From the IMG/VR virus record IMGVR_UViG_3300005537_000001, positions 62,001 to 126,000 of that record: a stretch of DNA of 64,000 bases; one strand, written 5' to 3'. Positions 8,232-54,067 of the stretch are shown in pieces; position 1 is the stretch's first letter, and each line of letters opens with the position of its first letter. The notes beneath the pieces were generated by a model, which saw nothing but the letters and a program-made list of their open reading frames with translations, was not told the DNA's origin and did no database searches. The position numbers and the translations under genes are program-made.

Positions 8232-8341
8232 AGTGGCTGAAGCGACTTTGGAATAAAATAAAGCCGAAGCGGTGGATGTGCCCAACATGTCTAGGTTATG
8301 GGTGCTACGAGTGTGATTACCGAGGTGACATAGACACATGA
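8228..8341 (+). CDS. 37-aa Cys-rich mini-protein (CPTCLGYG-CYEC)
   Basis: ATGA overlaps at both ends; not in ORF track. Confidence 0.55.
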   Translation: MKWLKRLWNKIKPKRWMCPTCLGYGCYECDYRGDIDT

Positions 8342-9423
8342 AAGCCAAGAAAGAAACAACCCTTTTCACCGTGTTGACTGGATCACATCTCTACGGTAAC
8401 GCGAGCGAAACATCGGATTTTGACTACAAGGCCGTCTGCGTCCCTCCTCTCGATGAACTGCTTCTCAACACCAAGATAACAAACCGCAAGGAAAAACCGG
8501 TTGGTCTCAAGCAAGGTGATAAGATGGCGGCCGGTGAAGCTGAAACCGAATATCTTCCGCTCCAAGTTTTCCTCGATGACTTCTTCAATGGTCAAACCTA
8601 CGCCCTTGAGGTAGCCTTCGCGGTGAAGCAGGGAAAGTTTGAGCTCTTCTCGCCCAATGATCGAGATACGTTAGAAGCATCTACTTCCCGCGATATCGAC
8701 ATCGATCCAGGCTATATTAGGGATATTATTTCCGATCTCATAAATCTTTATCTCACGAAAAACGTCAAGAAGATGGTTGGTTACGCGGTATCGCAGTCCA
8801 AGCTGTATGGTTTGAAGACTCAGCGCTACACTTCGTTGAACGAAGCTTTGTGCATCATCGAGGAATATTCGCACGACTTCTTGAGTCCAAATGACAACAA
8901 TGAGAAGCTTACCTTCAATGATTCGCCAATTCTTCTCGCTCGACTGCTTGCGCTACCACACATCAAGGAAATTCAAATCTTCAATGCTGATGGTGGAAGC
9001 GCGCTTGCACCAGCTCTCGAAATCTGCGGAAAGCAATATCCGTACACGAGTCGAATTTCTACCGTCGTAAAATCAATGCTGAAAACAGTTGGTGATTATG
9101 GTGCCCGCGTTAAGGAGTTCGACGGGCAGGGTGTTGATTGGAAAGCGCTATCCCATGCCATCAGGATAACTGATCAGGTTCTCGAGTTGTGCAGCACAGG
9201 TTTTCTCACATTTCCACGCCCGAACGCTCAGTTCTTATTGGATGTAAAGACCGGGAAATTGACGCTTGACGAGGCGACAGACTACCTCAATGCCGCATTT
9301 GCGAAGGTGGATGATGCGATTATCACCTCAAAATTGCAAGAACGGACGCCTGAACTAGAGAAAAAATTCAGGGAATGGAAAATTCAGGTTCTCAGGTCAA
9401 TCTACGGAGTTGACGTTGGATAA
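8338..9423 (+). CDS. Pol beta-superfamily nucleotidyltransferase (RlaP/NrdC.11-like)
   Basis: GSHLYG...SDFD motif; K...HA.R helix. Confidence 0.8.
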   Translation: MKAKKETTLFTVLTGSHLYGNASETSDFDYKAVCVPPLDELLLNTKITNRKEKPVGLKQGDKMAAGEAETEYLPLQVFLDDFFNGQTYALEVAFAVKQGKFELFSPNDRDTLEASTSRDIDIDPGYIRDIISDLINLYLTKNVKKMVGYAVSQSKLYGLKTQRYTSLNEALCIIEEYSHDFLSPNDNNEKLTFNDSPILLARLLALPHIKEIQIFNADGGSALAPALEICGKQYPYTSRISTVVKSMLKTVGDYGARVKEFDGQGVDWKALSHAIRITDQVLELCSTGFLTFPRPNAQFLLDVKTGKLTLDEATDYLNAAFAKVDDAIITSKLQERTPELEKKFREWKIQVLRSIYGVDVG

Positions 9424-14953: not shown

Positions 14954-16255
14954 ATGACAAATTTCGTCAAGGTGATTAAGGCTTGTGAAAGCGCAAGCGG
15001 AGCTGGAACCAAGGAGACCATCAAGGCCGCCCTGAAGACAGCAGATCCTACTGCGGTTCGCCTCATCGCGGAAGCCCTCAACCCATACCGCGTCTTCGGT
15101 ATCCGGAAGTACGATCGACCAAAGGCTTACGGAGCTGCTCCGAAATCCGCAGCATCATTCAACGTTTGGTTTGATCTCCTCGACAAGCTGGCCTCACGTG
15201 AGCTTACGGGAAATGCCGCTTCGATCGCGGTAACCACCGACCTTGCTTGCTACGATGTGGAGACGGCTTCCTACCTCGAGCGTATCCTCGACAAGGACCT
15301 CAAGGCCGGCTTTAGCGCAGACACGGTCAACAAGATTCACAAGAACGCGATTCCCACCTTCGAGGTGATGCTTGCCGACAAGTGCGACACTCCGGAGGAG
15401 CTAGAAACTGAAATCACGTTCCCTTGCCAAGCTGATTTCAAATACGACGGCGAGCGGACAATCGCGGTCGTGAAGAAAGATTCCGTGATCTACTACTCGC
15501 GTAGCGGCAAGGAAGCTACCCACGTCAACGGTCTCTTCGATGATGAGCTTCAGCGCCTCCGTGATCTTTCCGGTGAAGACATCGTCCTCGATGGCGAACG
15601 CTACGCTTCTAACTTCACCGAGACGATGAACGCCAAAAAGAGTGGCAACGATGAGGCGAAGGCGAATCTCCGCTTCCGCGCCTTCTTCATGATGCCGCTC
15701 TCCGATTGGATCGCGCAGAAAACCAACATCACGATGAAGGCAGCTCGTGAGACCCTCATCTTCCTCCTCAAGAAAGCCAACTGCAAGAAGATCATCATCT
15801 CGGAAGGTCGGGAAGTCAAGAACTACCAGGACATGATGAATTACTGCAACGAGGCCATCGACAAGCACGGCGTCGAAGGTCTCATCTTGAAGAATTGGAA
15901 CTCACCCTATATCTGGGATCGCAAGCTGGCCTGGTGCAAGGTGAAGCGGTTTTTTGATGTTGATTGTCGCGTCGTCGGATTTTATCCTGGCCGGCCGAAG
16001 AGCCGGTTGGAAAATAGTCTTGGTGGCATCAACGTGGTTGGCTTCACCGAGGATGGTACCCGAGTTGAAGCCAACGTCGGAAGCGGGTTCAGCGATGAAC
16101 TCAGAACCGAGATATGGAACAACCAGAAGGCTTGGATGGGACGCACTGTGGTCATCAAGTACCAAGAAGTCAGCAAGTCCAAGAGCAAGGCGGTTGCTTC
16201 CCTGCGGTTCCCCACCTTCGAACGTGATCGTGACGACAAGGAAGTGGAGATCTAG
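14954..16255 (+). CDS. lig: ATP-dependent DNA ligase
   Basis: KYDGER, EGLILK, WCKVK, VGSGF, LRFP.F motifs. Confidence 0.93.
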   Translation: MTNFVKVIKACESASGAGTKETIKAALKTADPTAVRLIAEALNPYRVFGIRKYDRPKAYGAAPKSAASFNVWFDLLDKLASRELTGNAASIAVTTDLACYDVETASYLERILDKDLKAGFSADTVNKIHKNAIPTFEVMLADKCDTPEELETEITFPCQADFKYDGERTIAVVKKDSVIYYSRSGKEATHVNGLFDDELQRLRDLSGEDIVLDGERYASNFTETMNAKKSGNDEAKANLRFRAFFMMPLSDWIAQKTNITMKAARETLIFLLKKANCKKIIISEGREVKNYQDMMNYCNEAIDKHGVEGLILKNWNSPYIWDRKLAWCKVKRFFDVDCRVVGFYPGRPKSRLENSLGGINVVGFTEDGTRVEANVGSGFSDELRTEIWNNQKAWMGRTVVIKYQEVSKSKSKAVASLRFPTFERDRDDKEVEI

Positions 16256-28232: not shown

Positions 28233-28261
28233 TTTACACCAGACCAGATGCGTGATAGAAT
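28233..28261 (+). promoter_or_regulatory. sigma70-like promoter of tmRNA
   Basis: TTTACA-17-TAGAAT with TG. Confidence 0.7.
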
Positions 28262-28267
28262 AAGTTT

Positions 28268-28623
28268 GAAAACAGCGTAAACGTAGATTGCGAAAATTGG
28301 TGACACCCGGGTTCGAATCCCGGCATCTCCACCAAAAGCATCTTCTTTTGGGGCAGACCTTTGAGGAGTCGAGGTAGCAACGTAAACCCTCCAGTAAATG
28401 TTGCATTGAGGATGCTTTTGATGGGGATGATACATGGCATTCGACCATCAGTGAATAACCTTCTATGCGCTCGATAGGCGTTCGCCGTAAGCGAAGCAAA
28501 TCCAATAAAAGCTAATGATGCTTTTTTCGGGGAAGAACTACGCCTAGCGGCCTAGTCCCTGCGGGGCTTAAACCACCCTGTAACCTAACGGTTAGGGAGG
28601 AGATCAGACAAGGGTCTCCTCCC
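28268..28623 (+). ncRNA. ssrA: circularly permuted two-piece tmRNA, tag ANDAFFGEELRLAA
   Basis: T-arm and CATCTCC-ACCA at 28306-28334 precede GGGGATG at 28423; G3:U70 pair; tag 28511-28555. Confidence 0.9.
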
Positions 28624-28646
28624 GCTCCTACGCTAGGAGGCGTGAA

Positions 28647-29944: not shown

Positions 29945-30240
29945 TATGCAGTCAATCATCCTCATAATACTCGGTGGAATTGGTTTAGGCCTATCCTTGG
30001 AAGTTCCTCACCGTGAGAACTTTACACCTGACCACGCGGTTGGTGCCGGCGTCTGCGGAATTTTGTGGGTTATGCTCTGCTTCGCGCTAGCGATGAGGCT
30101 AACGTTTGCCGCGTAATCTACATAAATGAAGATCACGGTTACGCAGGTTAAGAGAAAGTTTACTTTTTGGGGATTCTGTATATAACTATATCAAATCAAC
30201 TAAACGCTAGTTGATCACTTCTAACCAACGTGGAGCACGT

Positions 30241-31359
30241 ATGGACAAAAAGAAAGAAATTACCGTATTCATCGGTCGATTTTCCCCATTTCACAATGGT
30301 CACGCTGAAGTGCTCAAGCGGGCGCTGGAAACCTCACAAGTAGTTCTCGTGCTGGTTGGCAGCTCTGGGCAGGCACGGACCACCAAAAATCCCTTCACCT
30401 TCGAAGAACGCCGTCAGATGATTACCGACTACGTTCGATACCTAGGCGCGATATGGCGCCCTGGTCAGGGAGGTGAGCTAATTGTCGAACCAATCTACGA
30501 TCATCCCTACAACGACAACAAGTGGATTGAAGGCGTCCAAGCCGTTGTCAACAGGGTAAAGGCAGAAAATACCAGCCTTCGTGGACTGTCAAACTGGTAC
30601 AATTATCTTACCGGCTCAGATCGCGACGCAACTACCTGGTATCTCAACGCCTTCGGTGATTTCTTCGAGAAGGACCTTATCACCAACCATTCAGCTGGAT
30701 TAGACTTAAGCGCGACAAAGATTCGTGACATTCTATTCAACACGGAAACGCTGGTTGAGCTTGAAGTCAAGCTGAATAAGCTTGTACCGTCATCGACTCT
30801 CAGCCACCTGATCGCGTTCGTGGATCATCACCCAGCATATTCGGAGCTGGCGAAGGAATACCTGTACATTGAAAGGTACAAGGAGAGCTACAAGCTGGCT
30901 CCCTATCCGGTAAGCATTCAAACCGTCGACGCGTGCGTGATTCAATCCGGACACGTGCTTGTCTGCGTTCGCGACAACTTCCCCGGCAAGGGGCTTTGGT
31001 GCCTGCCGGGTGGACATCTTGACATTGATCTCGGAGAACGCCTCCTTGACGCGGCCATCCGTGAGCTCACGGAGGAAACTCGAATCGAGCTTTCAAAAGC
31101 GCAGCTTTATGGCTCCGTGCGTGACAAGGAGGTGTTCGATCATCCCGGCCGCAGCCTCAAGGGTCGAGTTATAACGATGGCCTACCTCTTGAAGCTGGAC
31201 GATACGAAACCCCTACCGAAGGTGAAACCTCAGAAGGGAGAGGTTAAGAAGGTAATGTGGTTGCCGATCGCCGAAGCGCTGTCGAGCAAGAACATGGACA
31301 AGTGGTTCGACGATCACTATTCGATTTTGGAAACCCTATACGGGCGGATTAAAAACTGA
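30241..31359 (+). CDS. nadM: bifunctional NMN adenylyltransferase/Nudix ADP-ribose pyrophosphatase
   Basis: GRFSPFHNGH; Nudix box GG...GE....AA.REL.EET. Confidence 0.92.
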   Translation: MDKKKEITVFIGRFSPFHNGHAEVLKRALETSQVVLVLVGSSGQARTTKNPFTFEERRQMITDYVRYLGAIWRPGQGGELIVEPIYDHPYNDNKWIEGVQAVVNRVKAENTSLRGLSNWYNYLTGSDRDATTWYLNAFGDFFEKDLITNHSAGLDLSATKIRDILFNTETLVELEVKLNKLVPSSTLSHLIAFVDHHPAYSELAKEYLYIERYKESYKLAPYPVSIQTVDACVIQSGHVLVCVRDNFPGKGLWCLPGGHLDIDLGERLLDAAIRELTEETRIELSKAQLYGSVRDKEVFDHPGRSLKGRVITMAYLLKLDDTKPLPKVKPQKGEVKKVMWLPIAEALSSKNMDKWFDDHYSILETLYGRIKN

Positions 31360-31398
31360 GAGAACGACTCTCAGGTCATTCACGATAAGGAGCTTATC

Positions 31399-32889
31399 AT
31401 GGCAGCAAAAAGAAAAGAATTTACGGTCGAGCAATACCTCTCTCCTTCCAAGAAGGATATTGAGTATATGCAGCCGGATCAGTTGAAAATCAGCTTGATC
31501 TGCCGCATGGACAGCTACAAGTTTGCGCACCCCTTCGCTTACCGTAAGGGAATTCAGGCGATGAGCGCCCACATGCTGGCGCGAGTCAAGAGCCACGTTA
31601 CGATCATTCCAGCCGGAATGCAACTGCTGACCAAGAAGTATCTAACGCAGCGCATCACGATGGCCGACGTGGACGCCGCAGAGCAATTTGCGATTGGTCA
31701 CTTTGGCCGCAAGCTCTTCGCTCGCGACAGCTGGGAAGGCGTTGTCAACGAGCATGGCGGAGCCATTCCCATCATCATCCGCGCGGTGCCGGAAGGTACT
31801 CGAATTCGCGGTGGGCAGCCGCTGTATTCAGTAACGGCGTTCGGTGAGCTGTATTACTGGATGTCAACCGCCTTCGAAACGCTCCTGCAGCGCGGTATCT
31901 GGTATCCAACGACCATCGCCACGATGGACTACGATATCAAAAATGATATTCGTATGTTCTACGAAGATACTGGCGCGGACATGGCGATGCTTCCATTCGC
32001 TCTCCACGATTTCGGTGCTCGCGGTGTGACCGCACCCGAACAGGCAGAAATTGGCGGTTTTGCCCACACGATTGGATTCATGGGTTCAGACAACATCGAA
32101 GGAATACTTACCGCAAACTTCTACTACAAGTGCGCGATGTCGGCTTTCTCGGTCTACGCTACCGAGCACAGCGTTGAGTGCTCCTTCGGGCTGGGTTCTG
32201 AGGATGAGGTTGAGTACATTCGACATCAGCTGCGTCAAGCTCCAGCTGGATCGATAGTTTCGATCGTCATCGACGGTAAGGATACCTACCGAGCAACCGA
32301 AGCGATCTGCACAACGCTTCGAGATGAGGTGATCGCGTGCAAGGCGAAGGTAGTTCTTCGCCCAGACAGCGGTGATATGCAGGAAATCGTTCCTCGCCTG
32401 CTCCGCCGGCTCGATCAAGCGTTTGGGCACGTCGTTAACAAGAAGGGCTTCAAGAAGATCAACTACGTTGGTATCCTGCAGGGAGACGGAGTCGATCACC
32501 TCGCGATTCGCAGCCTGCTTGGCAACATCATGTCGCGTGGATATTCGGCCGACAACGTTATCTTCGGCAGCGGAGGTGCGCTGCTGCAGAAGGTCAACCG
32601 TGACACCTACAAGTTCGCCCAAAAGGCGAGCGCCATGATGGTTGATGGGAAGTGGATTGGATTGGCGAAAGATCCCATCACCGACAAAGGTAAGAAATCG
32701 GAGGAAGGCGTGCTCACCTTGCTTCGCAGTCGAATGACCGGAGAGCTGATGACCGGTCGGTTGGACGATGGTCCATTCGACACCGAGTGGGAAGATGTTC
32801 ACCAGCTTGTCTATCACTGCGGCCGTCTCTTCAACGAGACAACCCTCGATGAGGTTCGCAATCGGGTTGAAGCCCTAGGAAACTACTGA
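31399..32889 (+). CDS. nadV: nicotinamide phosphoribosyltransferase
   Basis: DSYK..H, HDFG.RG, ATEHS, RPDSGD, QGDGV, FGSGG.LLQK..RDT. Confidence 0.93.
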   Translation: MAAKRKEFTVEQYLSPSKKDIEYMQPDQLKISLICRMDSYKFAHPFAYRKGIQAMSAHMLARVKSHVTIIPAGMQLLTKKYLTQRITMADVDAAEQFAIGHFGRKLFARDSWEGVVNEHGGAIPIIIRAVPEGTRIRGGQPLYSVTAFGELYYWMSTAFETLLQRGIWYPTTIATMDYDIKNDIRMFYEDTGADMAMLPFALHDFGARGVTAPEQAEIGGFAHTIGFMGSDNIEGILTANFYYKCAMSAFSVYATEHSVECSFGLGSEDEVEYIRHQLRQAPAGSIVSIVIDGKDTYRATEAICTTLRDEVIACKAKVVLRPDSGDMQEIVPRLLRRLDQAFGHVVNKKGFKKINYVGILQGDGVDHLAIRSLLGNIMSRGYSADNVIFGSGGALLQKVNRDTYKFAQKASAMMVDGKWIGLAKDPITDKGKKSEEGVLTLLRSRMTGELMTGRLDDGPFDTEWEDVHQLVYHCGRLFNETTLDEVRNRVEALGNY

Positions 32890-33092
32890 TGAATTCCATT
32901 GACCTCTGCGGGTTGATCAAGGGAATGAAGCTGCCGGCGGCGATAGCTGAAATCGAAAAGGCCGGGTGTACCGCGCGGTACACCTACCTTAACGGTAAGA
33001 ACCTGGTTGACAATGTAACGAGCGATTTCGTTGATACCCGCCTCAACCTTCGGGTTGAGCGCGACATCGTTAAGCACGCGAGAATCGGTTGA
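32889..33092 (+). CDS. peptidase inhibitor I78-like small protein
   Basis: VTSDF...RLNL.V...I...G. Confidence 0.5.
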   Translation: MNSIDLCGLIKGMKLPAAIAEIEKAGCTARYTYLNGKNLVDNVTSDFVDTRLNLRVERDIVKHARIG

Positions 33093-33250
33093 GCAAGAAG
33101 CCAAAATTCAAGAAGGTAACGATACCGGTAGGCAAGCGCTGCTTGTATTGCCGAGGTACCGGGCTGAAGCGAGCGTATGATCCGACGCGGACCGACGATT
33201 GCACGTGCTACTATTGCGCCGGCACCGGTTACGACGGAACCCGGTCATGA
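33055..33250 (+). CDS. DnaJ-type CxxCxGxG zinc-finger mini-protein (start uncertain)
   Basis: CLYCRGTG and CYYCAGTG; stop overlaps pnuC ATG. Confidence 0.55.
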
Positions 33251-33819
33251 TCCTCGAAATCGCAGCAAACGCTGTTACCGCGGCATCGATACTTCTCGCA
33301 ACTAGAAACAGCATTCATACCTGGTGGACTGGCATAATCGGCTCACTGCTGTTTCTCGCGCTGTTCTATCTCAACCAGCTCTACGCCGATTCGATGCTGC
33401 AAATTTTCTTCGTCGCTACCAGCTTGATGGGATGGTGGCAGTGGAAGCACTTTCGGGGTAAGAAAGTAGATAGGCCAATCTCCAAAACGGATGGTTCTAC
33501 CGCCATCATTATCTCGTGCTTAGCGATCGTAGCGACCATGGGATATGGATGGCTGCTAAAAACATTCACGAATGATTTTATGCCCTACGTCGATGCCGCG
33601 GTAATGGCGCTCAGCATAATCGCGCAGTGCCTGCTGATGCAGCGCAAGCTTGAAAGCTGGTGGGTTTGGGTAGTCGTGAATACCATCTCAATTCCTCTCT
33701 ACGCCTCACGTGGAATGTATGTTACGGCGGCGCTCTACGCTGCCTACTGGATCAACGCATGGATTGGAGCAGCATCATGGAAAAACATAGCGCGGTCTCA
33801 AATGTTGAGCGCGGCATGA
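33247..33819 (+). CDS. pnuC: nicotinamide riboside transporter
   Basis: W..GII, LYAD..LQ.FF...GW..W, DA....SI.AQ.L...K..E.W..W. Confidence 0.9.
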   Translation: MILEIAANAVTAASILLATRNSIHTWWTGIIGSLLFLALFYLNQLYADSMLQIFFVATSLMGWWQWKHFRGKKVDRPISKTDGSTAIIISCLAIVATMGYGWLLKTFTNDFMPYVDAAVMALSIIAQCLLMQRKLESWWVWVVVNTISIPLYASRGMYVTAALYAAYWINAWIGAASWKNIARSQMLSAA

Positions 33820-33966
33820 GCGAAGAAACGTGGCGGTGGAACGTCGGTGAAGGTACAGAGGAGCAGAGAAATCTCGCTCTCATCTACTGCGCGATGGATC
33901 ATCCGAATCCAGTAACTCGTCACGTCTGCCGTGAAATCTTGGCGCGGAAGTTAACGGAGAAATCAA

Positions 33967-34977
33967 GTGAAGACATACGGCCTAATCGTCGGTAAGTTCT
34001 CCCCGCTTCACCGCGGTCATGAGCACCTCATCAGTGAAGCTGAAAAACAGTGTGATAGCCTGTTGGTTCTGAGCTACTCGAATCCGGAATTTCGCAAGTG
34101 CGAGGCAAAGATTAGAAAAGAATGGTTGCAGGCACGGTTTCCTTCGGTTCGCTGCGTCGTTCTTGACCCGATTAATTTTCCATCGATGCCAGACAACCAA
34201 GCGAGCGACGCTGAACAGCAGGAATTTTTCAGCTGGATAGTCAACGACGTTTTGGAATATCCGGTGACCCACCTGTTCGCTAACGAGCGATGGGCTGAAA
34301 AGTGCGCACTAAACCTTTCGATTGGCGCGGGGCACCATGTAACAGCGGTAGCATTGGATCCACTGCGGGTGAAGAATCCGATCAGCGCGACATCCATCCG
34401 AGAAGCTCCACACCTCAACGCAAATTGGATGTCACCATTCGTTCGCGCGTCATACGTTACGCAGAAGATAGTTCTTCTTGGTGGTGAATCAACGGGTAAA
34501 ACGACTCTCGCGAAAGCCCTTGCTGAAAAATTCGATACCAGCTGGGTACCTGAATATGGCCGTGAGCTGTGGGAAGAAAAGAATGGTGAGCTTGTTTTTA
34601 GCGACATGTTGAGAATCGGTCATGAGCAGAAATTTCGTGAAAAGTATTTCAACATCGGCGCTAATCGCTATCTCTTCTGCGATACCTCTCCTCTTACCAC
34701 GATGGGGTACAGCATGTGGCTGTACGGTAAAGTTGATGACAAGCTCGTGAAGCTGGCTGAAGAACTATACGACGGCGTCATTTTTTGCCAGGCAGATTTT
34801 GCGCACGTGAACGACGGGACGAGAGTTGGGCATGATTTTCGAAGCATGCAGCAAGATTGGTACAAGCACGTCATTCCGAAGATGAAGTGCCCAATCATCT
34901 CGGTGACCGGTACCATTGAGGAACGCGTTCTTACCGTGACCAACTGGCTGAAGACATCCAACCACAATTGGAACTAG
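33967..34977 (+). CDS. nadR: NadR-like NMN adenylyltransferase/ribosylnicotinamide kinase
   Basis: GKFSPLHRGH; GGESTGKT; EYGR; DT. Confidence 0.92.
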   Translation: MKTYGLIVGKFSPLHRGHEHLISEAEKQCDSLLVLSYSNPEFRKCEAKIRKEWLQARFPSVRCVVLDPINFPSMPDNQASDAEQQEFFSWIVNDVLEYPVTHLFANERWAEKCALNLSIGAGHHVTAVALDPLRVKNPISATSIREAPHLNANWMSPFVRASYVTQKIVLLGGESTGKTTLAKALAEKFDTSWVPEYGRELWEEKNGELVFSDMLRIGHEQKFREKYFNIGANRYLFCDTSPLTTMGYSMWLYGKVDDKLVKLAEELYDGVIFCQADFAHVNDGTRVGHDFRSMQQDWYKHVIPKMKCPIISVTGTIEERVLTVTNWLKTSNHNWN

Positions 34978-34985
34978 GAGATAAA

Positions 34986-37194
34986 ATGAAGGCGATGATG
35001 CTCGCTTTACTGTTGATCGGTGCCGCTCAGGCGGATGAGCTTGATGAGGTAGTTGTAACAGCTTCGCGGCAAGGTATCCAGTCGCTCCAGAAGATACCAG
35101 CTTCCATCACGGTAGTTGACCTAAAGGCTGAAGGACGCCTTGGAGCTACCGATCTCAGCGATGTCGCTAATTCGATTCCATCTCTCACCATCGAGCAAGG
35201 TGGACCAGGGTTAAACAAGATTGACATCCGTGGAATTACCGTTGAAAATGCCGACGTTCTCAACAACATCGACAGCAGACCTCTTGTCGCGGTCTACGTT
35301 GACGATACCCCGCTCGCCCTCGACGGCTTCAATCCGGATCTTAAGGTATTTGACCTTGACCGCATCGAGGTGCTGCGCGGTCCTCAGGGCACCCTCTACG
35401 GTGCCAGCTCCATGGCCGGCACGATTCGCTACATCACGAAAAAACCGAATCCCCAGGAATATTCTGGATCCGATGAAATTACGGTTTCAGATACGGTTGG
35501 CGGCGGCGTCAACTACGGCATCAAGGCGAGCGTCAACCTCCCGCTCAGCGCTCAAACGGCGCTGCTACTAAGCGGATACAACGCGCGCAATTCTGGATGG
35601 ATCAACAACATTCAGAATGGTCAGAACGGTGAAAATTGGGATCGGTCAACTCAAGGTCGAGCCGCGCTGCGTTGGACGCCGTCTGACTATTTCACCCTCG
35701 ACGCGAGCGTTCTCTTCGAGGAGCTTAACACCGGTGGAAGCAACTTTTCCTTCTCGGGCTTGGGCAAGAACGAATACGCAAGCTTAACTCCAACTCCAAT
35801 CACCGACAACATGAAGGTGTACAACCTAACCGAAACGATTACCCCGGATTTCGGTACTATCATCTCCTCAACCTCGTACACCACGCGAACTACCGGTTTC
35901 AACGACCAGGGGCAGTACCTTTCGGAGCTGTTCTTCGGAGTAACCGAGCCTACCACCTACGTCAACCAGAACACCCTGTCGCAGTTCTCCCAGGAATTTC
36001 GAGTCGTTTCTCGCCAAGATCAGCGCACGCGCTGGATTGTTGGCACCTTCTTCAATCACCTCAGCCGCGTCAACTACCAAGATGACAGCGGCGTCGGTTT
36101 TGGGCAGTACATTGGCTTCGATCCTCGAACGATCGGTGGATTTACGGCGGACAGCGTTTTCTCTGGAACTCAGGGCGTTAGGGAACGCGATTTTGGCATC
36201 TTTGGTGAGGTTACGTGGGCGCTAACGGATCGCCTCGACTTTACGGCCGGAGCCCGCTACTTCAACTGGCGACAGCGCTTCAACCTGCAGTTTGGTGGAC
36301 CAGGTGGATACGGAGCGTACGATACCGGCAGCAACGTTGTCAACAAGCAGCTCATCGAGGACGTTGGAGCTAAGGCGCAGGGAGTCAACCCGCGCTTCAT
36401 CGTTAGCTACAAGCTTTCCGATGACGCTATCGTCTTCGCCGAGGCGGCTGAAGGATTTCGCTACGGTGGTGCGAACGAGGCGGTACCAAACGCCAACGTT
36501 CCTGGCGCGTGCGGTGGGCAGCTGCAAAGTCAATTTCACCTGACTTCAGCTCCACCGTCCTACGGCCCAGATCACCTGTGGAGCTACTCGCTTGGTGAGA
36601 AGTCGCTCTTCCTTGACGACAAGCTTCGCGTCAACGCGACCATCTTCCTCATCGATTGGAAGAACGTGCAGGAGGCTGCCTACCTCGGTTCTTGCTCGTA
36701 TACGTACACAACCAACGCTGGAACGGTTATTAGCAAGGGCGGAGAGCTGGAAGCGACCTACAAGCTGGCACGCTATCTTACGCTCGGAATTAACGGATCC
36801 TTTACCCATGCCGCGGCAGATGGTGCTCTTCCCAACGTTGGAGCTCAAAGCGGAGATCTTACTCCGTACAGCCCAGAATGGCTTGGAGCCGCAACTGTTG
36901 ATTACAAGCTTGGTTTCAGCCGGTTGAACGTTGAATATTCGTACCACGGTCGAAGCGGAACGCGCTTCGACCCAGCTGATCCCAGCTACGTAGTTCTACC
37001 AGCCTACAAGAATCTCAATCTGGCTGAAACGTTCGAAGTTCGGTAGGACGCAGGTTAGCTTGTTCTCGCGGAACGCGTTGAACAGCTCACAGGTAACGAT
37101 GATCTACCCGGATCTTCTCGGCACTCAGCCTGGAAATCAGGTAGCGTACGCCAGACCCAGAACCATTGGGGTTCGATTCTCACAGCAATTCTAG
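34986..37194 (+). pseudogene. TonB-dependent receptor with +1 frameshift near 37041
   Basis: signal peptide, EVVVTA, plug RIEVLRGPQGTLYG; 50-aa tail ...PRTIGVRFSQQF in next frame 37042-37194. Confidence 0.88.
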
Positions 37195-43005: not shown

Positions 43006-43139
43006 AGCAAACCGTTGATTAGGATTATCTGGCGCAGTGAGTTTCGATACCACGCCTACAGGTGCTAACATCTGTAGAGCCTCAGTTTAGGGAGAGGCAT
43101 CTGACCGCCTACGGGCACCCCTATCGCTCTTTGTTTGCT
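43006..43139 (+). ncRNA. element copy 1, permuted, around T-arm-like/acceptor/D-arm pieces
   Basis: AGCAAAC-CG..GATTATC ... TTT-GTTTGCT. Confidence 0.7.
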
Positions 43140-43217: not shown

Positions 43218-43324
43218 TGCAACCGCTTAAAGAAGGTTATCTAAGTTCAACTCTTAGGCTGCTCACGCAGTCACGGCATATCCTCACGGATACGGCGCCA
43301 ACTCCGTCTTTTACCTTTGTTGCA
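43218..43324 (+). ncRNA. element copy 2, permuted
   Basis: TGCAAC-CG..GGTTATC, CTAAG-TTCAACT-CTTAG T-arm, TTT-GTTGCA. Confidence 0.7.
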
Positions 43325-44308: not shown

Positions 44309-44944
44309 ATGCATCACCTTTTATACAAAACCACAAATATTCTCAACAATCGCTTCTACGTTGGGATGCACTCTACTAAGAACCCTAAAGACAGGTATCT
44401 TGGGAGTGGCAAGCGAATAAAGTACGAGATCCAAAAGTATGGTAAAGAAAACTTCAAGAGAGAAATCTTGGAGGAGTTCCCAACTCGTAAGGCGCTCGAA
44501 GATGCTGAAGCAGAAGTCGTGAATGAGGAACTTCTTTCCGATCCTCTCTGTCTCAATTTGAAAAATGGTGGAGAAGGTGGTGGTAGAATATGGAATTCTA
44601 ACCATGCAAAGAAATTTCATCGGGCTGGTTGGGAAGCGATGCATAGAAACAAAGATCATGTAGCAGCCGGATTAAAATCGGGTAAAACTAGAGAAAAAAG
44701 AAATCAAGAAGGATTGTACCCTCCTGGAACTTTTACGAGTCATTTTGGTGGAATGCAGCATTCTGAAAAATCTCGTGCGCAGATGAAAAATACTCATGCT
44801 AGAAACGCTCATCAGCGGGCTGAAAAAAATTCAAATTTTGGCAAGCGAAATGCTTGTGTTAACAAGGACGGAAAGAATAAAAGAATTCCACTAGATCAAC
44901 TTGAAATGTTTATAACTGATGGATGGACTAAAGGTCTAGTTTAG
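44309..44944 (+). mobile_element. free-standing GIY-YIG (Seg-like) homing endonuclease
   Basis: LLYKTTN..N.FYVG.H....D.YLGSG. Confidence 0.85.
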
Positions 44945-45556: not shown

Positions 45557-45739
45557 ATGAACCCATTAGATCAAGAGGAACACATCAAGCGCATCGTTTG
45601 CGAAAGTCAAACGTATACTGAAGTGATTAAGAAGCTGGGTTTCTCCAAGAATGCAAATTATGAGTGGATCGTCAATTTTATCAAGGAAAACAACCTTAAG
45701 TTGAAACCACTCTCGTTCGAGAACGCTAATTTAAGTTAG
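45557..45739 (+). CDS. small hypothetical protein
   Basis: AGGAG RBS. Confidence 0.6.
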   Translation: MNPLDQEEHIKRIVCESQTYTEVIKKLGFSKNANYEWIVNFIKENNLKLKPLSFENANLS

Positions 45740-45787
45740 CTGCAGTAGAAGTCTGCCGTTTGGGCGTCGAAAAGTCCACAAGATTAC

Positions 45788-45913
45788 GAGGTAATAGCTC
45801 AATAGTAGAGCATCAGGGAAGTAGAAGAAATAGGAACTACGCTGAAGTACAAAGCGACTATCTAAAGTATTGAAAACCGGAAGACAATGGTGCGATCCCA
45901 TTTTACTTCACCA
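45788..45913 (+). tRNA. tRNA-Phe(GAA)-like gene with 52-nt insert
   Basis: acceptor, D and T arms intact; TTGAAAA loop after insert. Confidence 0.65.
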
Positions 45914-46021
45914 TCAAATAAAGCTGCTACGAGCGAGTGAAAAATAGCAGCGCCGCCGGAAACGGTCCCACCTGGAGTGGTTAAGAGAATCTCGCATGCG
46001 GCAGAAATGCCGTCTCTTTAT

Positions 46022-46166
46022 GAAGTTGTAGGGAAGTGGTTAAACCCAGCGAAGCCGAAAGGCATATCCATTCTCGCCTTTTGTTGCGCAAGCAACCGAT
46101 AGAAAATGGTTATCATTAAGTCGCTGCCGAAAGGCTACGCCGGTTCGAATCCGATTGCCAACTTCA
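46022..46166 (+). tRNA. Tyr-like tRNA body interrupted by element copy 3 (46066-46114)
   Basis: GAAGTTG/CAACTTC acceptor; anticodon unresolved. Confidence 0.55.
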
Positions 46167-46219
46167 CTCCCAATCTTTTTGCTGGTTCTTATAAATATTC
46201 TCGTAAGGAGAATTTTAAA

Positions 46220-46930
46220 ATGAAGCCTGCAAAATATGTAAGACAAGAAAATCGAAAATATCACTACATTTACAAAATTACTCGATTTGATAATCATTAC
46301 TATTATGGCCGTCATTCAACGGATAATTTAGATGATGGATATTTTGGTAGTGGCAAACGTCTTTGGCATTCCATAAATTATCATGGCATAGAAAAACACA
46401 CTAAGGCGATTTTGGAATATCTTCCAACACTAACCTCTCTAAAAATAAGAGAAAGCCAGATAGTAAATGAAACATGTCTAAATGATCCCCTCTGCTTGAA
46501 CCTCCAATTAGGAGGTGGTGGTGGATTCATTAGTGAAGAACATCAGCGAAAGGCCTCATTAGCAGGTAGAGATAAAGCTCTCACTGCAATGAGGGAAATT
46601 TTTAAAAGTGGTAGCGAAGAAGCGGCGCGAAGAGCAAAAAATTCTGCTGCTACTCAAAAGCGTATGAGGCAAAATGGTGAGTTAACATATACCAAAAGAG
46701 AGCGAAATAACATCACCACTGTAGCCGCAACATTAGCCGCCGCCACTCCTAAATCTAGGGAAAAGAAAAAGAAAACATTTGCTGAGCGAAAACATCAGCA
46801 GGGTGAAAAGAATTCAAATTTTGGAAAGAGAAATGCTGTCATCAACAAAGATGACAAGAATAAGAGAATCCCTCTGTCAAAATTAGATGAGTATCTAAAT
46901 GCCGGATGGACCAGAGGTCTAATACGATAG
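46220..46930 (+). mobile_element. second GIY-YIG (Seg-like) homing endonuclease
   Basis: YIYKIT...YYG.HST....D.Y.GSG; C-terminus shared with 44309. Confidence 0.85.
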
Positions 46931-47012
46931 GGAGGTTGTCTATGTCATCGCTAAACGCAACAAGGGTAATCTACGCCACAGCGTAGGTGGAACCACCGCA
47001 AAATTTAGAAGG

Positions 47013-47273
47013 ATGTGCGAGGTATATCGATACTTCTCGCGTCACTGGGAACACGTTTTAGATTTTAGCGACGAGTCGCTAGTCGAACTGTTCAACCATG
47101 AGTCCTACGGAACTCCATGTTCACCAAAGAACGGATTTCTAGTAGGCAAGCAGCACCTTAACGTCAACGTTGCCATGTGGAAGGAAGACATCATCAAGGG
47201 AGTTCTGTTTAAACAGGAACTTTACGATGGTGAATTTCCAACTTGGTGGCTTGACAGTATTTTCAGGGTATAG
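47013..47273 (+). CDS. hypothetical protein
   Basis: ORF track. Confidence 0.6.
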   Translation: MCEVYRYFSRHWEHVLDFSDESLVELFNHESYGTPCSPKNGFLVGKQHLNVNVAMWKEDIIKGVLFKQELYDGEFPTWWLDSIFRV

Positions 47274-47338
47274 CTCAGCGGGAGAGCGCTCGTTTTGGAA
47301 ACGAGAGGTCGCACGTTCAATCCGTGTTACCCTGACCA
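47264..47338 (+). tRNA. tRNA-Pro(TGG)
   Basis: cloverleaf. Confidence 0.88.
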
Positions 47339-47401
47339 CTTTATACGTCCACCATGCTGTGGAATGTGCACCTAAGACCGTCACGCGGTCTTTGCCTATA
47401 T

Positions 47402-47477
47402 GCCACTTTAGCTCAGCTGGTAGAGCAAAGGTTTTGTAAACCTGAGGTCGTGGGTTCGATCCCTACAAGTGGCACCA
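47402..47477 (+). tRNA. tRNA-Thr(TGT)
   Basis: cloverleaf. Confidence 0.9.
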
Positions 47478-47625
47478 AATTCAGCTCTCGCAAGAGAGTT
47501 CGAGCGCGGCTCGAAGGCGCTCCGATGCTGTCCAGCGCGACAGTGGCTTTCTTCGAAAGGCGGATTCGAACCGCCGGGTTAGTAGCCAGTGATTGTTAAT
47601 CTCAAAACCCCGAAAAATTTTTCAT

Positions 47626-47748
47626 GAGGAAGTAGCTCAGTGGCAGAGCAGCCGCCAAACATCGTTTACGATATTTTGTCGAGCAATCGACCGTTGTATA
47701 ATGGTTATCCAAAGCAGCTTGTCGTAGGTTCGAATCCTATCTTCCTCT
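47626..47748 (+). tRNA. tRNA-Trp(CCA)-like gene interrupted by element copy 4 (47661-47709)
   Basis: GAGGAAG/CTTCCTC acceptor; TCCAAA directly after element. Confidence 0.65.
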
Positions 47749-47782
47749 CTTATTCTTTGAATATACGATTGATAAATATCGT

Positions 47783-48325
47783 ATGGCAAATCAATTTACA
47801 AAAGCAAAGGCATTAGGATTACCCAATCCTATACCATCCGAAGCTACATTAAAGAAATGGTCAGTTTCAGCTACAATAACCAATAATCGTAGATTTTCAG
47901 ATCCCAAAAATAGGGATCGTCAAAGTGCAGCTATGAAGCTTGCTGTTGAGAAATATCCAGAATCTTATGGTCCTTCGAATAGAGGTAGAACCAAGCGGAT
48001 AGATAAACATGGTCAAGCCTTTCAGGGAAAGTGGGAGCTGTATTTCTTTGAATGGTGCTTAGAAAATAACGTGGAAATTAAACGAGTTACTGAATCATTT
48101 CCATATGAATGGAATGGTAGTAGAAAATATTTTCCGGATTTTTATTTACCACAACTCAGCATGTATGCTGAAGTTAAGGGATATGAAACTCCTAGAGATT
48201 TAGCAAAATGGCGTGATTTTCCACATCGTCTAAAAATTATTAGGCGGGCGGATATCGAAAAGATATTAAAGAGGAATTTTGATTTAGGGTCTCTAGCTCA
48301 ATTGGTTAGAGCAGGAAACTCATAA
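47783..48325 (+). CDS. PD-(D/E)XK endonuclease
   Basis: Y.PDFY......EVKG. Confidence 0.8.
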   Translation: MANQFTKAKALGLPNPIPSEATLKKWSVSATITNNRRFSDPKNRDRQSAAMKLAVEKYPESYGPSNRGRTKRIDKHGQAFQGKWELYFFEWCLENNVEIKRVTESFPYEWNGSRKYFPDFYLPQLSMYAEVKGYETPRDLAKWRDFPHRLKIIRRADIEKILKRNFDLGSLAQLVRAGNS

Positions 48326-48767: not shown

Positions 48768-48918
48768 AGTTTTACTGCAAGAGCTGGAGGACGGGGGTAT
48801 CACCGAAATTGACCTCTCCTCGTTGGGCAGCGGCTAGTCGGTATGCCGGTTGTGTTGGAGCGTGATTTCACGCTGTCTTGGAGGAAACTAACAAGGCGTT
48901 GCGAGCACAAATTTTTAC

Positions 48919-49001
48919 GCGAGTGTGGATAATGAGAATTGGCAGATCTAACAGGCTCAAACCCTGTACCTTTGTGGGTTCGACTCCCACCACTCGTACC
49001 A
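48919..49001 (+). tRNA. tRNA-Leu(CAA)
   Basis: large D loop, short V region. Confidence 0.82.
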
Positions 49002-49102: not shown

Positions 49103-49110
49103 AAATCTAT

Positions 49111-49193
49111 GCGAGTGTGGATAATGAGAATTGGCAGATCTAACAGACTTAAAATCTGTTCCCTTGTGGGTTCGACTCCCACCACTCGTACCA
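49111..49193 (+). tRNA. tRNA-Leu(TAA)
   Basis: near-duplicate of Leu(CAA). Confidence 0.82.
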
Positions 49194-49271: not shown

Positions 49272-49401
49272 ATTTCCAAACCGTTGATCGTTGATTATCG
49301 GTAAAATCGTCCCCTCATTAAAGGGTACAGATGAGTTTCAGGTTCAAGCCCTGCACCCTTCCGCGAGGAAGGTCTATCGACTTTCGCTTTTGTTTGGAAA
49401 T
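49272..49401 (+). ncRNA. element copy 5, permuted, around degenerate tRNA pieces
   Basis: 10-bp ATTTCCAAAC/GTTTGGAAAT; T-arm; CCTTCC-GCGA-GGAAGG. Confidence 0.72.
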
Positions 49402-51813: not shown

Positions 51814-51880
51814 TTTGAAAAACCGATAGACATGGTTATCTATCATTCACGCTACCCGTGTCGAACTTTTGTTTTTCAAA
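51814..51880 (+). ncRNA. element copy 7, permuted, near-empty
   Basis: TTTGAAAAAC/GTTTTTCAAA; about 17 nt enclosed. Confidence 0.7.
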
Positions 51881-52266: not shown

Positions 52267-52400
52267 TGACAACCGTTGATGATTGGTTATCTTTCGCCAA
52301 AACTGAAAGGCTAGCACAATTGGAATAGTGCACCCAACTTAGACTTGGGAGATGAGGGTTCGAGTCCCCGCTAAAACATCGATCTTCGCTTTTGTTGTCA
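52267..52400 (+). ncRNA. element copy 8 around a circularly permuted tRNA
   Basis: TCTTTC-GCCA precedes GAAAGG; D arm; CCCAA-CTTAGAC-TTGGG; T loop. Confidence 0.75.
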
Positions 52401-53952: not shown

Positions 53953-54067
53953 TTCTGACTGTTGACAAGCCGTCGTAACGAGAAGGTGGACCTAGGGACT
54001 TTTACGGCTTTCTACCTAGGGCGTCAACGCATTGGCACTCGAGCGCTAAAATCGTTACAGTCAGATT

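What the first reader, a model, noticed from the sequence alone, without database searches (positions are those of the whole stretch)
46022..47748. Same element in linear, intron-like form inside two anticodon loops (Trp-like and Tyr-like)
Copies at 46066-46114 and 47661-47709 are both 49 nt and capped by a GCAA tetraloop. They sit between intact D and T arms. Removing the insert at 47626 could restore a CT-CCA-AA Trp loop, and no intact Trp tRNA occurs in the window. The 46022 anticodon is unresolved, and GCCGAAAGGC is duplicated on either side of the insert. Established: host anticodon nucleases target tRNA loops and phages counter with variant tRNAs. Inference: the inserts mask loops until they are processed.
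Basis: partly seen in the sequence, partly recalled or inferred. Interest (0 to 1): 0.8.

Follow-up and report, generated by a model that had tools for sequence, protein, structure and literature searches.

The report
Ro-binding Y RNA modules inside tRNAs
The two "introns" are copies of the stem that Y RNAs use to bind the Ro60 protein, grafted into tRNA genes of a 368-kb phage; I found the same layout in many other phages and in giant viruses, and no description of it in the papers I could search.

Summary
Two related ~50-nt hairpins capped by GCAA sit in the anticodon region of tRNA-like genes at 47626-47748 and 46022-46165. Deleting the first gives a clean tRNA with a C-U-CCA-A-A loop. The second host gene is degenerate and looks Leu(UAA)-like, not Tyr-like.

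The insert is not a known intron type: no bulge-helix-bulge motif, no group I core, no Rfam ribozyme. It belongs to a conserved, covarying family: a 9-bp stem, an internal loop (UUU on one strand, CG(A)A on the other), a capped stem, then a GGUUAUC tail. I found about 64 distinct copies in tRNA genes of uncultured phages and giant viruses, and none in a 596-Gb scan of bacterial and archaeal genomes.

The same two half-elements also occur in reverse order around tRNA-like bodies or short loops, which is the ordinary Y RNA topology. That form occurs in this window and next to Ro60 genes elsewhere, including cultured Streptomyces phages, where it gives sub-threshold matches to Rfam YrlA. CGAA-N6-13-GGUUAUC occurs 57 times in 80 Ro60 loci (about 2 expected).

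So the inserts are Ro60-binding Y RNA stems, and these genes are tRNA/Y RNA chimeras. Whether the module is ever cut out to give a working tRNA is unresolved (about 0.3).

The parts
47626..47748 (+). tRNA-like host gene; becomes tRNA(CCA) once 47657-47707 is removed. Discriminator is U and no CCA is encoded.
   Evidence: Rfam tRNA 46.6 bits with a 57-nt insertion; ARAGORN -i Trp(CCA), 51-nt insert at 32/33
47657..47709 (+). Y-RNA-type module, closed-hairpin form. J1 AAAC 47657-60; P1 5' strand 47661-69; loop strand ..UUUU; P3 47678-91 (GCAA cap); CG 47692-93; P1 3' strand 47696-705; tail UAUC 47706-09.
   Evidence: R1 covariance model 59.4 bits (this copy is in the model's seed); structure supported by covariation; MFE fold reproduces P1 and P3
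46022..46165 (+). Degenerate type-II tRNA-like host gene. Best reading is Leu(UAA) with anticodon stem CAGCG/CGCTG. Irregular T stem and acceptor, no CCA.
   Evidence: ARAGORN only at 80% threshold; no Rfam tRNA hit; read by hand
46054..46114 (+). Second module copy, a variant that lacks AACAUCGU. P1 = CCAUU(C)UC 46068-75 with GA(A)AAUGG 46102-09; P3 46083-96 (GCAA cap); CG 46097-98; tail UAUC 46111-14. Preceded by the GCCGAAAGGC hairpin 46054-63.
   Evidence: R1 40 bits, E 2.5e-8, not in the model's seed; fold z -2.3; no homologue of this variant elsewhere
46126..46135 (+). Second GCCGAAAGGC hairpin, the variable arm of the 46022 gene.
51815..51879 (+). Small RNA with ordinary Y RNA topology: outer stem UUGAAAAAC/GUUUUUCAA, CGAUA, inner stem, GGU-UAUC, 17-nt loop.
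   Evidence: MFE -16.1 kcal/mol, z -3.1
52268..52399 (+). Y-RNA-topology unit enclosing a complete tRNA-Leu(UAG)-like body. The acceptor is closed by a loop that contains GCCA, and the stem module branches from the acceptor 3' strand.
   Evidence: ARAGORN calls tRNA-Leu(TAG) only on the circularised insert; MFE shows all four arms inside P1 and P3; the fifth P1 pair is U-A changed to A-U
49277..49397 (+). Y-RNA-topology unit: outer stem CCAAAC/GUUUGG, inner stem GUUGAU/AUCGAC, tail UAUC, with a tRNA-like interior (T arm and closed acceptor).
   Evidence: z -1.9
43006..43139 (+). Y-RNA-topology unit: outer stem AGCAAAC/GUUUGCU, structured interior.
43219..43323 (+). Y-RNA-topology unit: outer stem GCAAC/GUUGC, CG, AAAG/CUUU, GGU-UAUC.
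   Evidence: z -3.0
46220..46930 (+). GIY-YIG-type homing-endonuclease-like ORF between the two host genes; paralogue of 44309-44944.
   Evidence: Pfam GIY-YIG/SegE on the paralogue; the same family lies next to module-bearing tRNAs in 10 phage loci including this window

Best explanation
Each insert is a Ro60-binding stem module of the kind that defines Y RNAs, grafted as a closed hairpin into the anticodon arm of a tRNA-shaped RNA. Reading from the tRNA outwards: an A-rich linker; a 9-bp helix (AUCGU+N4 paired with N4+AUGGU); an internal loop with UUU on one strand and CG(A)A on the other; a distal helix capped here by GCAA; then the single-stranded tail UAUC.

The genes are therefore tRNA/Y RNA chimeras. 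They are a circular permutation of YrlA-type Y RNAs: in YrlA the chain ends lie in the Ro stem and the acceptor is closed, whereas here the acceptor ends are free and the Ro stem is closed.

Shown: the family, its structure, its homology to Y RNA stems, and its linkage to Ro60 genes in other viruses.

Inferred: the module recruits Ro60 (phage- or host-encoded) to a tRNA-shaped domain, as Y RNAs tether Ro60 to partner enzymes. The 47626 RNA is an active member and the 46022 RNA a decaying one. Whether the module is later cut out is not settled; I rate retention somewhat more likely than excision.
For: (1) Family and structure. IMG/VR pattern scans plus the R1 model give 64 distinct copies, essentially all inside tRNA genes. 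94.8% of cells are paired, 39 cells show double changes, and 0 of 500 shuffles reach this. The outer helix covaries too: C-G to G-C, U-A to A-U, U.G to U-A or C-G.

(2) The same halves occur in reverse order (3' half, interior, 5' half), which is Y RNA topology. This is seen five times in the window and in cultured Streptomyces phages. There the unit hits Rfam YrlA in 5 of 5 phages tested (30-40 bits, E 2.5e-6 to 2e-3). It lies about 1.7 kb upstream of a Ro60 gene (TROVE plus vWA_Ro60), and its closed acceptor stem covaries across 8 phages.

(3) Locus L336: three tRNAs with the closed-hairpin insert and two small ordinary Y RNAs lie within 850 nt directly upstream of a Ro60 homologue (tblastn, 39% identity). 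All five carry G(G)AC-UGA(A/U)-N8-GG-UUAUC.

(4) CGAA-N6-13-GGTTATC occurs 57 times in 80 Ro60 loci; 54 are on the Ro60 strand and 50 lie upstream of the gene. About 2.2 are expected by chance.

(5) Literature. Y RNAs have a 5'-3' stem with a bulge carrying GNCGAA(N)G / CGAA, resembling the GGUCCGA contacted by Xenopus Ro60 (PMC4201824; PMC12135203). The giant-virus copies carry GGUCCGAA exactly.

(6) Against decoding. Bodies homologous to 47626 carry CCC or CUC where it has CCA (L082, L002/3, L151), and six RNAs sharing the acceptor GCCGAUG carry CUU (twice), GUC, GUU and AUC, with a sixth loop left unresolved. 47626 has U73, which is not the bacterial Trp discriminator (my own knowledge). 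I found no insert-free allele.
Against: No Ro60 (TROVE) gene in the window or in about 97 kb of the contig examined, nor in the 34 element-bearing loci.

Rfam YrlA and Y_RNA do not hit the window. The window copies have ACCG(U/A) rather than a full GNCGAA.

Several points favour real tRNA function. Deleting the module gives canonical cloverleaves with perfect 5-bp anticodon stems and 7-nt loops (U33, purine 37) in more than 15 independent genes. Many of these encode CCA. In this phage the 43 uninterrupted tRNAs cover 18 amino acids and lack only Phe and Trp, which are exactly the two interrupted genes. An Rnl2-type RNA ligase lies about 9 kb beyond the window.

Ro60 binding was not tested.
Confidence: 0.6

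Rival explanations
1. The module is a true removable intervening sequence. An endonuclease (possibly recruited through Ro60) cuts at the base of the 9-bp helix, a phage RNA ligase joins the exons, and the product is a working tRNA (Trp for 47626). The Y-RNA-like stem would then be the recognition handle of a new protein-dependent tRNA splicing route.
For: Clean cloverleaves after deletion, with a consistent 3' junction (GGUUAU|N, or GGUUA|U in loop insertions) and perfect stems. L140:2171 and L064 pair fully only with that junction. The 7-nt loop format is kept and CCA ends are encoded. Phe and Trp are the only amino acids without an uninterrupted tRNA among 43. Ligases are present: Rnl2-type near the window, T4 Rnl1-type plus Pnkp in TunaTartare. 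The loop insertion at 32/33 is incompatible with decoding unless removed.
Against: No known splicing signal. The junction differs by one base between the stem class and the loop class, and the 5' linker varies from 4 to 7 nt. The anticodon is not conserved within body families. 47626 has U73. No insert-free alleles or spliced sequences were found. The missing Phe/Trp pattern is also what one expects if insertions simply inactivated single-copy genes.
Confidence: 0.3
2. One reading: the inserts mask anticodon loops from host anticodon nucleases until they are processed.
For: The window copy at 47626 does interrupt the loop at 32/33. The phage carries RNA-repair-type genes: a CCA-adding enzyme, a RlaP-like nucleotidyltransferase and ligases.
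Against: Most family members are inserted at 28/29 and leave the loop exposed. The family also occurs in giant viruses of eukaryotes. There is no linkage to any nuclease or defence gene. The module is explained by Ro60 binding.
Confidence: 0.07
3. Selfish or decaying DNA: the hairpin spread between tRNA genes (helped by the neighbouring GIY-YIG endonucleases) and the hit genes are dead.
For: The 46022 copy is degenerate and unique. GIY-YIG ORFs neighbour module-bearing tRNAs in 10 phage loci including this window. Identical P3 hairpins occur in different tRNA hosts.
Against: Helices covary and host cloverleaves stay intact across diverged phages and giant viruses. The link to Ro60 loci argues for function.
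Confidence: 0.1
4. A self-splicing or self-cleaving ribozyme, or an archaeal-type bulge-helix-bulge intron.
For: Presence in both phages and eukaryotic viruses would fit a host-independent mechanism.
Against: No Rfam ribozyme or intron family even at E<=5. About 50 nt is far below any group I core. No 3-4-3 bulge-helix-bulge can be drawn at the junctions. The conserved bases are those of Y RNA stems.
Confidence: 0.03

Closest known systems
YrlA-type bacterial and phage Y RNAs (Rfam RF02553; Chen et al. 2014, PMC4201824)
   Same: A tRNA-shaped domain joined at the anticodon-stem position to a long stem carrying the CGAA-type Ro60 motif. Encoded in or near tRNA arrays and next to Ro60 in phages. 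The window's reversed units and the Streptomyces phage units have this topology.
   Different: In the two genes of this finding the chain is permuted: free acceptor ends (often with CCA in homologues) and a Ro stem closed by a loop. Many homologues keep a complete anticodon stem-loop as a third branch. No Ro60 gene was seen nearby in this phage. The Rfam model does not detect them.
Metazoan Y RNAs (Rfam RF00019)
   Same: GGUCCGA on one strand (PMC4201824) opposite UUGAC, then a second helix, then a single-stranded UUAUC. The UUGAC and UUAUC correspondence rests on human Y1/Y4 sequences recalled from memory. The giant-virus copies match GGUCCGAA ... GGUUAUC.
   Different: Metazoan Y RNAs have no tRNA body and their ends lie in the Ro stem.
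Archaeal and eukaryotic tRNA introns, and circularly permuted tRNA genes of Cyanidioschyzon merolae (PMC3978253, PMC4090602)
   Same: Short inserts at varied positions of the anticodon arm or acceptor, and genes in which the 3' part precedes the 5' part and the ends pair.
   Different: Those depend on a bulge-helix-bulge motif and the splicing endonuclease. No such motif is present here, and the hosts are bacteria or the carriers are viruses.
Bacterial and phage tRNA group I introns (PMC3984707)
   Same: Located in anticodon loops of tRNA genes, found in phages, associated with homing endonuclease genes.
   Different: Group I introns are at least about 200 nt with a P3-P8 core and a terminal G. 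This element is about 50 nt and a simple rod.
Deinococcus Yrn1
   Same: Chen et al. note that the order of T-like and D-like arms relative to the RNA ends differs between Yrn1 and YrlA, so permutation of tRNA-like Y RNAs has a precedent.
   Different: Yrn1 is not an otherwise complete tRNA gene with an anticodon loop.

Membership tests
Y RNA (Ro60-binding module) | Long stem interrupted by a bulge or internal loop carrying GNCGAA(N)G / GGUCCGA / CGAA | tested here: inconclusive
   Window copies have GAC-CGUUG (47626) and AAC-CGAUAG (46022): the CG and its position are kept, but the full motif is only partial. Giant-virus homologues have GGUCCGAA exactly, and L336 homologues have GGAC-UGAAG. 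Motif taken from PMC4201824 and PMC12135203.
Y RNA (Ro60-binding module) | Second helix followed by single-stranded (U)UAUC, as in Y RNAs next to Ro60 genes | tested here: met
   GGU-UAUC in both window copies. CGAA-N6-13-GGTTATC occurs 57 times in 80 Ro60 loci against about 2.2 expected, and 50 of them lie upstream on the Ro60 strand.
Y RNA (Ro60-binding module) | Gene lies next to a Ro60 (TROVE) gene | tested here: not met
   No TROVE gene in the window or in contig positions 53,170 to about 150,000. The remaining ~270 kb was not examined. The feature is met for homologues in L336 and in Streptomyces phages.
Y RNA (Ro60-binding module) | Binds Ro60/Rsr | not testable with these tools
   Needs a gel shift or immunoprecipitation.
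YrlA (Rfam RF02553) | Match to the covariance model (ends in the stem, closed acceptor, T and D arms) | tested here: not met
   No YrlA hit in window 42000-64000 at E<=2. The Streptomyces phage units hit at 30-40 bits, below the gathering score of 69. The two genes of the finding have the permuted chain order, which the model cannot match.
tRNA | Cloverleaf with 7-nt anticodon loop, U33, and a T loop | tested here: met
   47626 only after removing 47657-47707. 46022 only loosely.
Archaeal/eukaryotic spliced tRNA intron | Bulge-helix-bulge motif (3-nt bulges flanking a 4-bp helix) at the junctions; canonical position 37/38 | tested here: not met
   Junctions lie at 32/33 or 28/29. Both are at the open base of one helix, and no exon-intron pairing consistent across homologues could be drawn.
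Group I intron in tRNA | At least ~200 nt, P1-P9 core, U.G at the 5' splice site, terminal G | tested here: not met
   51 nt, ends in A or U, no Rfam Intron_gpI hit.
Small self-cleaving ribozymes | Match to hammerhead, hairpin, twister, pistol, hatchet or HDV models | tested here: not met
   No Rfam hit at E<=5 over 45700-47800.

The most novel reading that the evidence does not exclude
The Y-RNA-type stem is the handle of a previously unknown, virus-borne tRNA splicing and circularisation system. Ro60 (or a partner) recognises the stem, both strands are cut at its base, and an Rnl2/Rnl1- or RtcB-type ligase seals the tRNA. This would make these the first protein-spliced tRNA introns in bacterial viruses, and it would give a biochemical reason for the long-noted Ro60 / Y RNA / RtcB gene linkage.
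Probability: 0.25. Interest if true: 0.92.

Novelty: new variant of a known kind. Interest (0 to 1): 0.72.

Why it matters
Y RNAs and Ro60 occur from bacteria to humans, yet what the tRNA-like domain of bacterial Y RNAs does is still open.

These are dozens of natural RNAs in which a Ro60-binding stem is joined to an otherwise complete tRNA, with free acceptor ends, a real anticodon arm and various anticodons. They occur in both phages and giant viruses, often several per genome.

Two outcomes are possible. They may be a new permuted class of tRNA-mimicking Y RNAs, which would point to tRNA-handling enzymes as the partners that Ro60 is tethered to. Or they may be tRNAs that need a Ro-linked excision step, which would be a new splicing route.

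Either way, tRNA finders miss them, so phage and giant-virus tRNA and Y RNA inventories are undercounted. Well-studied Streptomyces phages, for example, carry unannotated YrlA-like genes next to their Ro60 gene.

Tried and rejected
- Bulge-helix-bulge reading: tried both mirror arrangements on several homologues. No consistent 4-bp helix between two 3-nt bulges.
- Group I or group II intron, or a small ribozyme: size, termini and Rfam scans at E<=5 are all negative.
- DNA-level elements (IS200/IS605-type ends, integron attC): considered because of the AAC...GTT ends and the hairpin. Rejected because there is only one hairpin, no cargo, and the helices covary as RNA.
- An ORF-containing intron as the explanation for the reversed halves at 52.3 kb: rejected, because no 3' half follows the downstream lipoprotein ORF.
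- Bacterial and archaeal genomes: 99 pattern hits in 596 Gb are at chance level (about 130 expected). None lies in a tRNA and all score <=35 bits on R1.
- Insert-free alleles or spliced sequences: none for the giant-virus Ile(UAU) gene or for 47626. The 35 hits for the GCGCC|CGCC junction are unrelated ordinary tRNAs.
- Homologues of the 46022 variant: none, only chance hits.
- Ro60 in this phage: not found by Pfam, tblastn, hhalign, or a walk over about 97 kb. Ro60-based locus searches did not return this contig, but the lists are capped.
- Agrobacterium phage Atu_ph07 (Ro60 annotated as 'Clp protease-like'): no recognisable Y RNA motif in the 650 nt after the gene.
- Literature: no description of tRNA genes carrying Y RNA stems, nor of permuted tRNAs in phages.
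Full report
**1. What is in the sequence**

The window is positions 62,001-126,000 of a 368-kb uncultured phage contig (IMGVR_UViG_3300005537_000001 = Ga0070730_10000005). It has no close relative among GenBank phages.

From 42.8 kb onwards it carries a tRNA array: 23 ARAGORN tRNAs including an amber suppressor, plus a permuted tmRNA at 28.2 kb.

Both are 49 nt and share this layout:
- TTTTGT
- a 5-bp stem capped by GCAA, with two compensatory pair changes between the copies
- CCG
- six variable bases
- AATGGTTATC

The host of the second copy, 47626-47748, is a good tRNA apart from the insertion. Rfam tRNA gives 46.6 bits with 57 extra nt in the anticodon loop. ARAGORN with introns gives tRNA-Trp(CCA) with a 51-nt insert between positions 32 and 33.

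The host of the first copy, 46022-46165, is poor:
- no Rfam tRNA hit
- ARAGORN finds it only at 80% threshold, as a type-II Leu(UAA)-like RNA
- irregular T stem and acceptor
- no CCA
- a further 15 nt, including a copy of its own variable-arm hairpin GCCGAAAGGC, before the element

A third interrupted tRNA lies at 45788-45910. It is Phe(GAA) with an encoded CCA, and it carries an unrelated 52-nt insert.

**2. The insert belongs to a large, structured family restricted to viruses**

Exact-pattern scans of IMG/VR found the same element in tRNA genes of many contigs. I built a covariance model (R1) from 18 of them. It found 66 copies (64 distinct) in 36 loci, many of which the strict patterns had missed.

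The consensus, read 5' to 3', is:
- an A-rich linker ending in AAC
- P1, a 9-bp helix (AUCGU+N4 paired with N4+AUGGU, with U.G and G.U wobbles)
- an internal loop (N3-6 UUU on the 5' strand, CG+N3 on the 3' strand)
- P3, a 4-9-bp helix with a variable cap
- the tail UAUC

Covariation is strong. 94.8% of cells are paired, 39 cells have changes on both sides, and 0 of 500 shuffles reach the observed value. Slid controls give 20-60% paired. In unbiased hits the outer part of P1 covaries as well.

R1 scores the 46022 copy, which was not in its seed, at 40 bits (E 2.5e-8).

One group of carriers is truly giant viruses of eukaryotes. Their loci encode a family B DNA polymerase with an intein, RING fingers, a ubiquitin hydrolase and C2H2 fingers. 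They have arrays of four or five such tRNAs each.

A scan of 596 Gb of bacterial and archaeal genomes gave only chance-level hits. None was in a tRNA.

**3. Where it sits in the tRNA**

I deleted every interval around each element and asked ARAGORN at rising thresholds.

Most copies lie in the 5' strand of the anticodon stem, between positions 28 and 29 (sometimes 29/30). Removing (N)AAAAC...GGUUAU restores perfect 5-bp stems and 7-nt loops with anticodons for Asp, Asn, Lys, Ile, Met, Pro, Val, Gly and Arg.

A smaller class, including 47626, lies between positions 32 and 33. It needs the cut one base earlier (GGUUA|U) to supply U33.

The 5' linker varies from 4 to 7 nt. No bulge-helix-bulge motif, group I core or Rfam ribozyme fits.

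**4. The same halves occur in reverse order**

Weak R1 hits led me to places where the 3' half (P3 3' strand, CG, N, P1 3' strand, UAUC) comes first and the 5' half follows after an interior. There are five in the window:

| Coordinates | Interior |
|---|---|
| 51815-51879 | 17-nt loop |
| 52268-52399 | complete tRNA-Leu(UAG)-like body; see below |
| 49277-49397 | tRNA-like (T arm, closed acceptor) |
| 43006-43139 | structured |
| 43219-43323 | structured |

In 52268-52399 the acceptor strands are GAAAGGC and GC|CUUUC-G-CCA, joined by a short loop. ARAGORN calls a tRNA there only on the circularised sequence.

Minimum-energy folds reproduce the outer-P3 and inner-P1 closure. Z-scores reach -3.1 for some units, but the 52268-52399 and 43006-43139 units are near background (-0.3 and -1.1).

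I first read these as circularly permuted tRNA genes. That reading turned out to be only half right.

**5. Identification as Y RNA**

A BLAST hit to Streptomyces phage TunaTartare exposed an unannotated unit of the same reversed kind, directly after tRNA-Ile. It has a perfect 9-bp P1 (AUCGAUUAC / GUAAUUGGU) and a tRNA-like interior whose acceptor is closed by a 6-nt loop.

The unit is conserved in 34 cluster-BE phages. Across eight of them, the upstream 3' acceptor strand and the downstream 5' strand covary, as do P1 and P3.

About 1.7 kb downstream lies a Ro60 gene (TROVE plus vWA_Ro60). A T4 Rnl1-type RNA ligase and a polynucleotide kinase-phosphatase lie further on.

Rfam's YrlA model matches the unit in all five phages tested, at 30-40 bits (E 2.5e-6 to 2e-3). 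This is below the curated threshold but consistent.

Chen et al. (PMC4201824) describe YrlA RNAs as a tRNA-like domain attached to a stem. That stem bears GNCGAA(N)G, resembling the GGUCCGA contacted by Xenopus Ro60. The Thermus phage study (PMC12135203) uses the conserved CGAA motif in the bulge of the 5'-3' stem to find phage Y RNAs.

The giant-virus copies of our element carry GGUCCGAA exactly at the P3/loop boundary. From memory, human Y1 and Y4 also continue with a second helix and then UUAUC. I did not verify this against a source.

**6. Two independent confirmations**

First, I searched IMG/VR with a Ro60 alignment and kept 80 loci. The strict motif CGAA-N6-13-GGTTATC occurs 57 times in them. 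54 are on the Ro60 strand and 50 are upstream of the gene. About 2.2 are expected by chance.

Second, R1 hit one of these loci, L336. The 850 nt directly upstream of its Ro60 homologue (tblastn, 39% identity) contain:
- three tRNAs with the closed-hairpin insert, one of which becomes tRNA-Arg(UCU) after deletion at 28/29
- a normal tRNA-Met
- two small ordinary Y RNAs

All five module-bearing RNAs carry G(G)AC-UGA(A/U)-N8-GG-UUAUC.

So the hairpin inside tRNAs and the stem of bona fide Y RNAs next to Ro60 are the same module.

**7. What the two genes of the finding are**

They are tRNA/Y RNA chimeras. Topologically they are a circular permutation of YrlA. The Ro stem still leaves the tRNA body at the anticodon arm. 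However, the chain ends are at the acceptor and the Ro stem is capped, here by GCAA.

47626 is a well-formed member. 46022 has lost the AACAUCGU motif, has a degenerate host, and has no homologue elsewhere. It is probably decaying.

**8. Retained or excised?**

This is the open point.

For excision:
- The restored cloverleaves are clean, and many encode CCA ends.
- The 32/33 insertion rules out decoding unless it is removed.
- An Rnl2-type ligase lies about 9 kb past the window.
- The phage's 43 uninterrupted tRNAs cover 18 amino acids. They lack only Phe and Trp, which are exactly the interrupted genes at 45788 and 47626.
- A third copy of the module, in a tRNA(CAU), lies in the downstream array.

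For retention:
- The module is a protein-binding stem with no splicing signal.
- The junction is not at a fixed distance from the helix.
- Bodies homologous to 47626 carry CCC or CUC at the anticodon. A family sharing one acceptor stem (GCCGAUG) carries CUU, GUC, GUU and AUC.
- 47626 has U73.
- No insert-free allele or spliced sequence turned up.
- The Phe/Trp gap is equally what one expects if insertion inactivated single-copy genes.

I put retention (Y-RNA-like function) near 0.5-0.55 and excision near 0.3. Pseudogene or other explanations take the rest.

**9. Limits**

- No Ro60 gene was found in the window or in about 97 kb of the contig. The other ~270 kb could not be read, and a host Ro60 is possible.
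- Ro60 binding was not tested.
- The window copies have only a partial CGAA motif.
- E-values from R1 are rough.
- The human Y RNA comparison rests on memory.

**10. Verdict**

The intron or loop-masking interpretation is only partly supported.

The element is the Ro60-binding stem of Y RNAs in a new, tRNA-embedded permutation. It is widespread in phages and giant viruses, and I found no description of it in the papers I could search.

Noticed in passing
window 45788-45910: A third interrupted tRNA: Phe(GAA), CCA encoded, with a 52-nt insert at about position 31/32. R1 does not match the insert, but it contains CUGAAG ... UAUC. Phe and Trp are the only amino acids without an uninterrupted tRNA among the phage's 43.
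   Followed up: partly
L264 1490-1640 (Streptomyces phage TunaTartare NC_070784.1, about 68,371-68,520) and the equivalent sites in 33 other cluster-BE phages: Unannotated YrlA-like Y RNA directly after tRNA-Ile and upstream of the Ro60 gene. A second reversed unit follows it (P1 CUGAAUGC / GUAUUCAG). In the Gilsonvirus group the anticodon-loop-like strand carries a 4-nt insertion.
   Followed up: partly
L336 2150-3000 (IMGVR_UViG_3300038492_000235): A compact cluster directly upstream of Ro60: three module-bearing tRNAs, a normal tRNA-Met and two small Y RNAs.
   Followed up: yes
window 44309-44944, 46220-46930, 47783-48325: Free-standing GIY-YIG-type homing-endonuclease-like ORFs (the third has unknown function) interleaved with the tRNAs. 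The same family flanks module-bearing tRNAs in 10 phage loci including this window, and a GIY-YIG plus NUMOD1 ORF lies in the giant-virus locus L070.
   Followed up: partly
window 62199-62272; L457 4973-5050: Two tRNAs with anticodon CUA (amber suppressors), which suggests possible TAG recoding in this phage. ORFs were called with table 11.
   Followed up: no
window 28242-28646: Permuted (two-piece type) tmRNA with tag ANDAFFGEELRLAA. There is also an Rfam Atu_At1 (Rhizobiales sRNA) hit exactly at threshold at 53953-54062, with homologous stretches in L082/L144. These are hints of an alphaproteobacterial host.
   Followed up: no
window 48916-49001 and 49108-49193: Tandem pair (92% identical) of odd tRNA-like genes with aberrant D regions. 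One is called Leu(TAA) of 70 nt, the other has a CTCAAAC loop.
   Followed up: no
window 30211-37046: NAD salvage cluster (NMNAT-NUDIX fusion, NAMPT/NAPRTase, PnuC NMN transporter, NadR-like kinase) followed by a TonB-dependent receptor gene, which is unusual cargo for a phage.
   Followed up: no
window 6823-9423 and 14954-16255; L457 12712-13740: RNA-repair-type genes: CCA-adding enzyme, RlaP-like nucleotidyltransferase, an ATP-dependent ligase, and (about 9 kb past the window) an Rnl2-family RNA ligase.
   Followed up: partly
L353 11980-13635 (Agrobacterium phage Atu_ph07, MF403008.1 93591-95246): The gene annotated 'Clp protease-like protein' is a Ro60 homologue (37% identity to the L336 Ro60 over 93% of its length). 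No recognisable Y RNA was seen in the 650-nt gap after it.
   Followed up: partly
L135, L039, L149, L156 (phage tRNAs with the module): Thirteen rather than twelve nucleotides between the T loop and the discriminator (an apparent 6-bp T stem). The window's 52.3-kb unit has eleven. This non-standard acceptor/T-arm length is unexplained.
   Followed up: no
L354-L432 (about 45-kb contigs, mostly from sample 3300045988): A 57-nt sequence (TCCATTTTAAGAGGCTTTTGTTATTAAC...AATGGTTATC) is conserved in dozens of ~45-kb phage contigs in a non-tRNA context. It was picked up by chance by a pattern scan.
   Followed up: no
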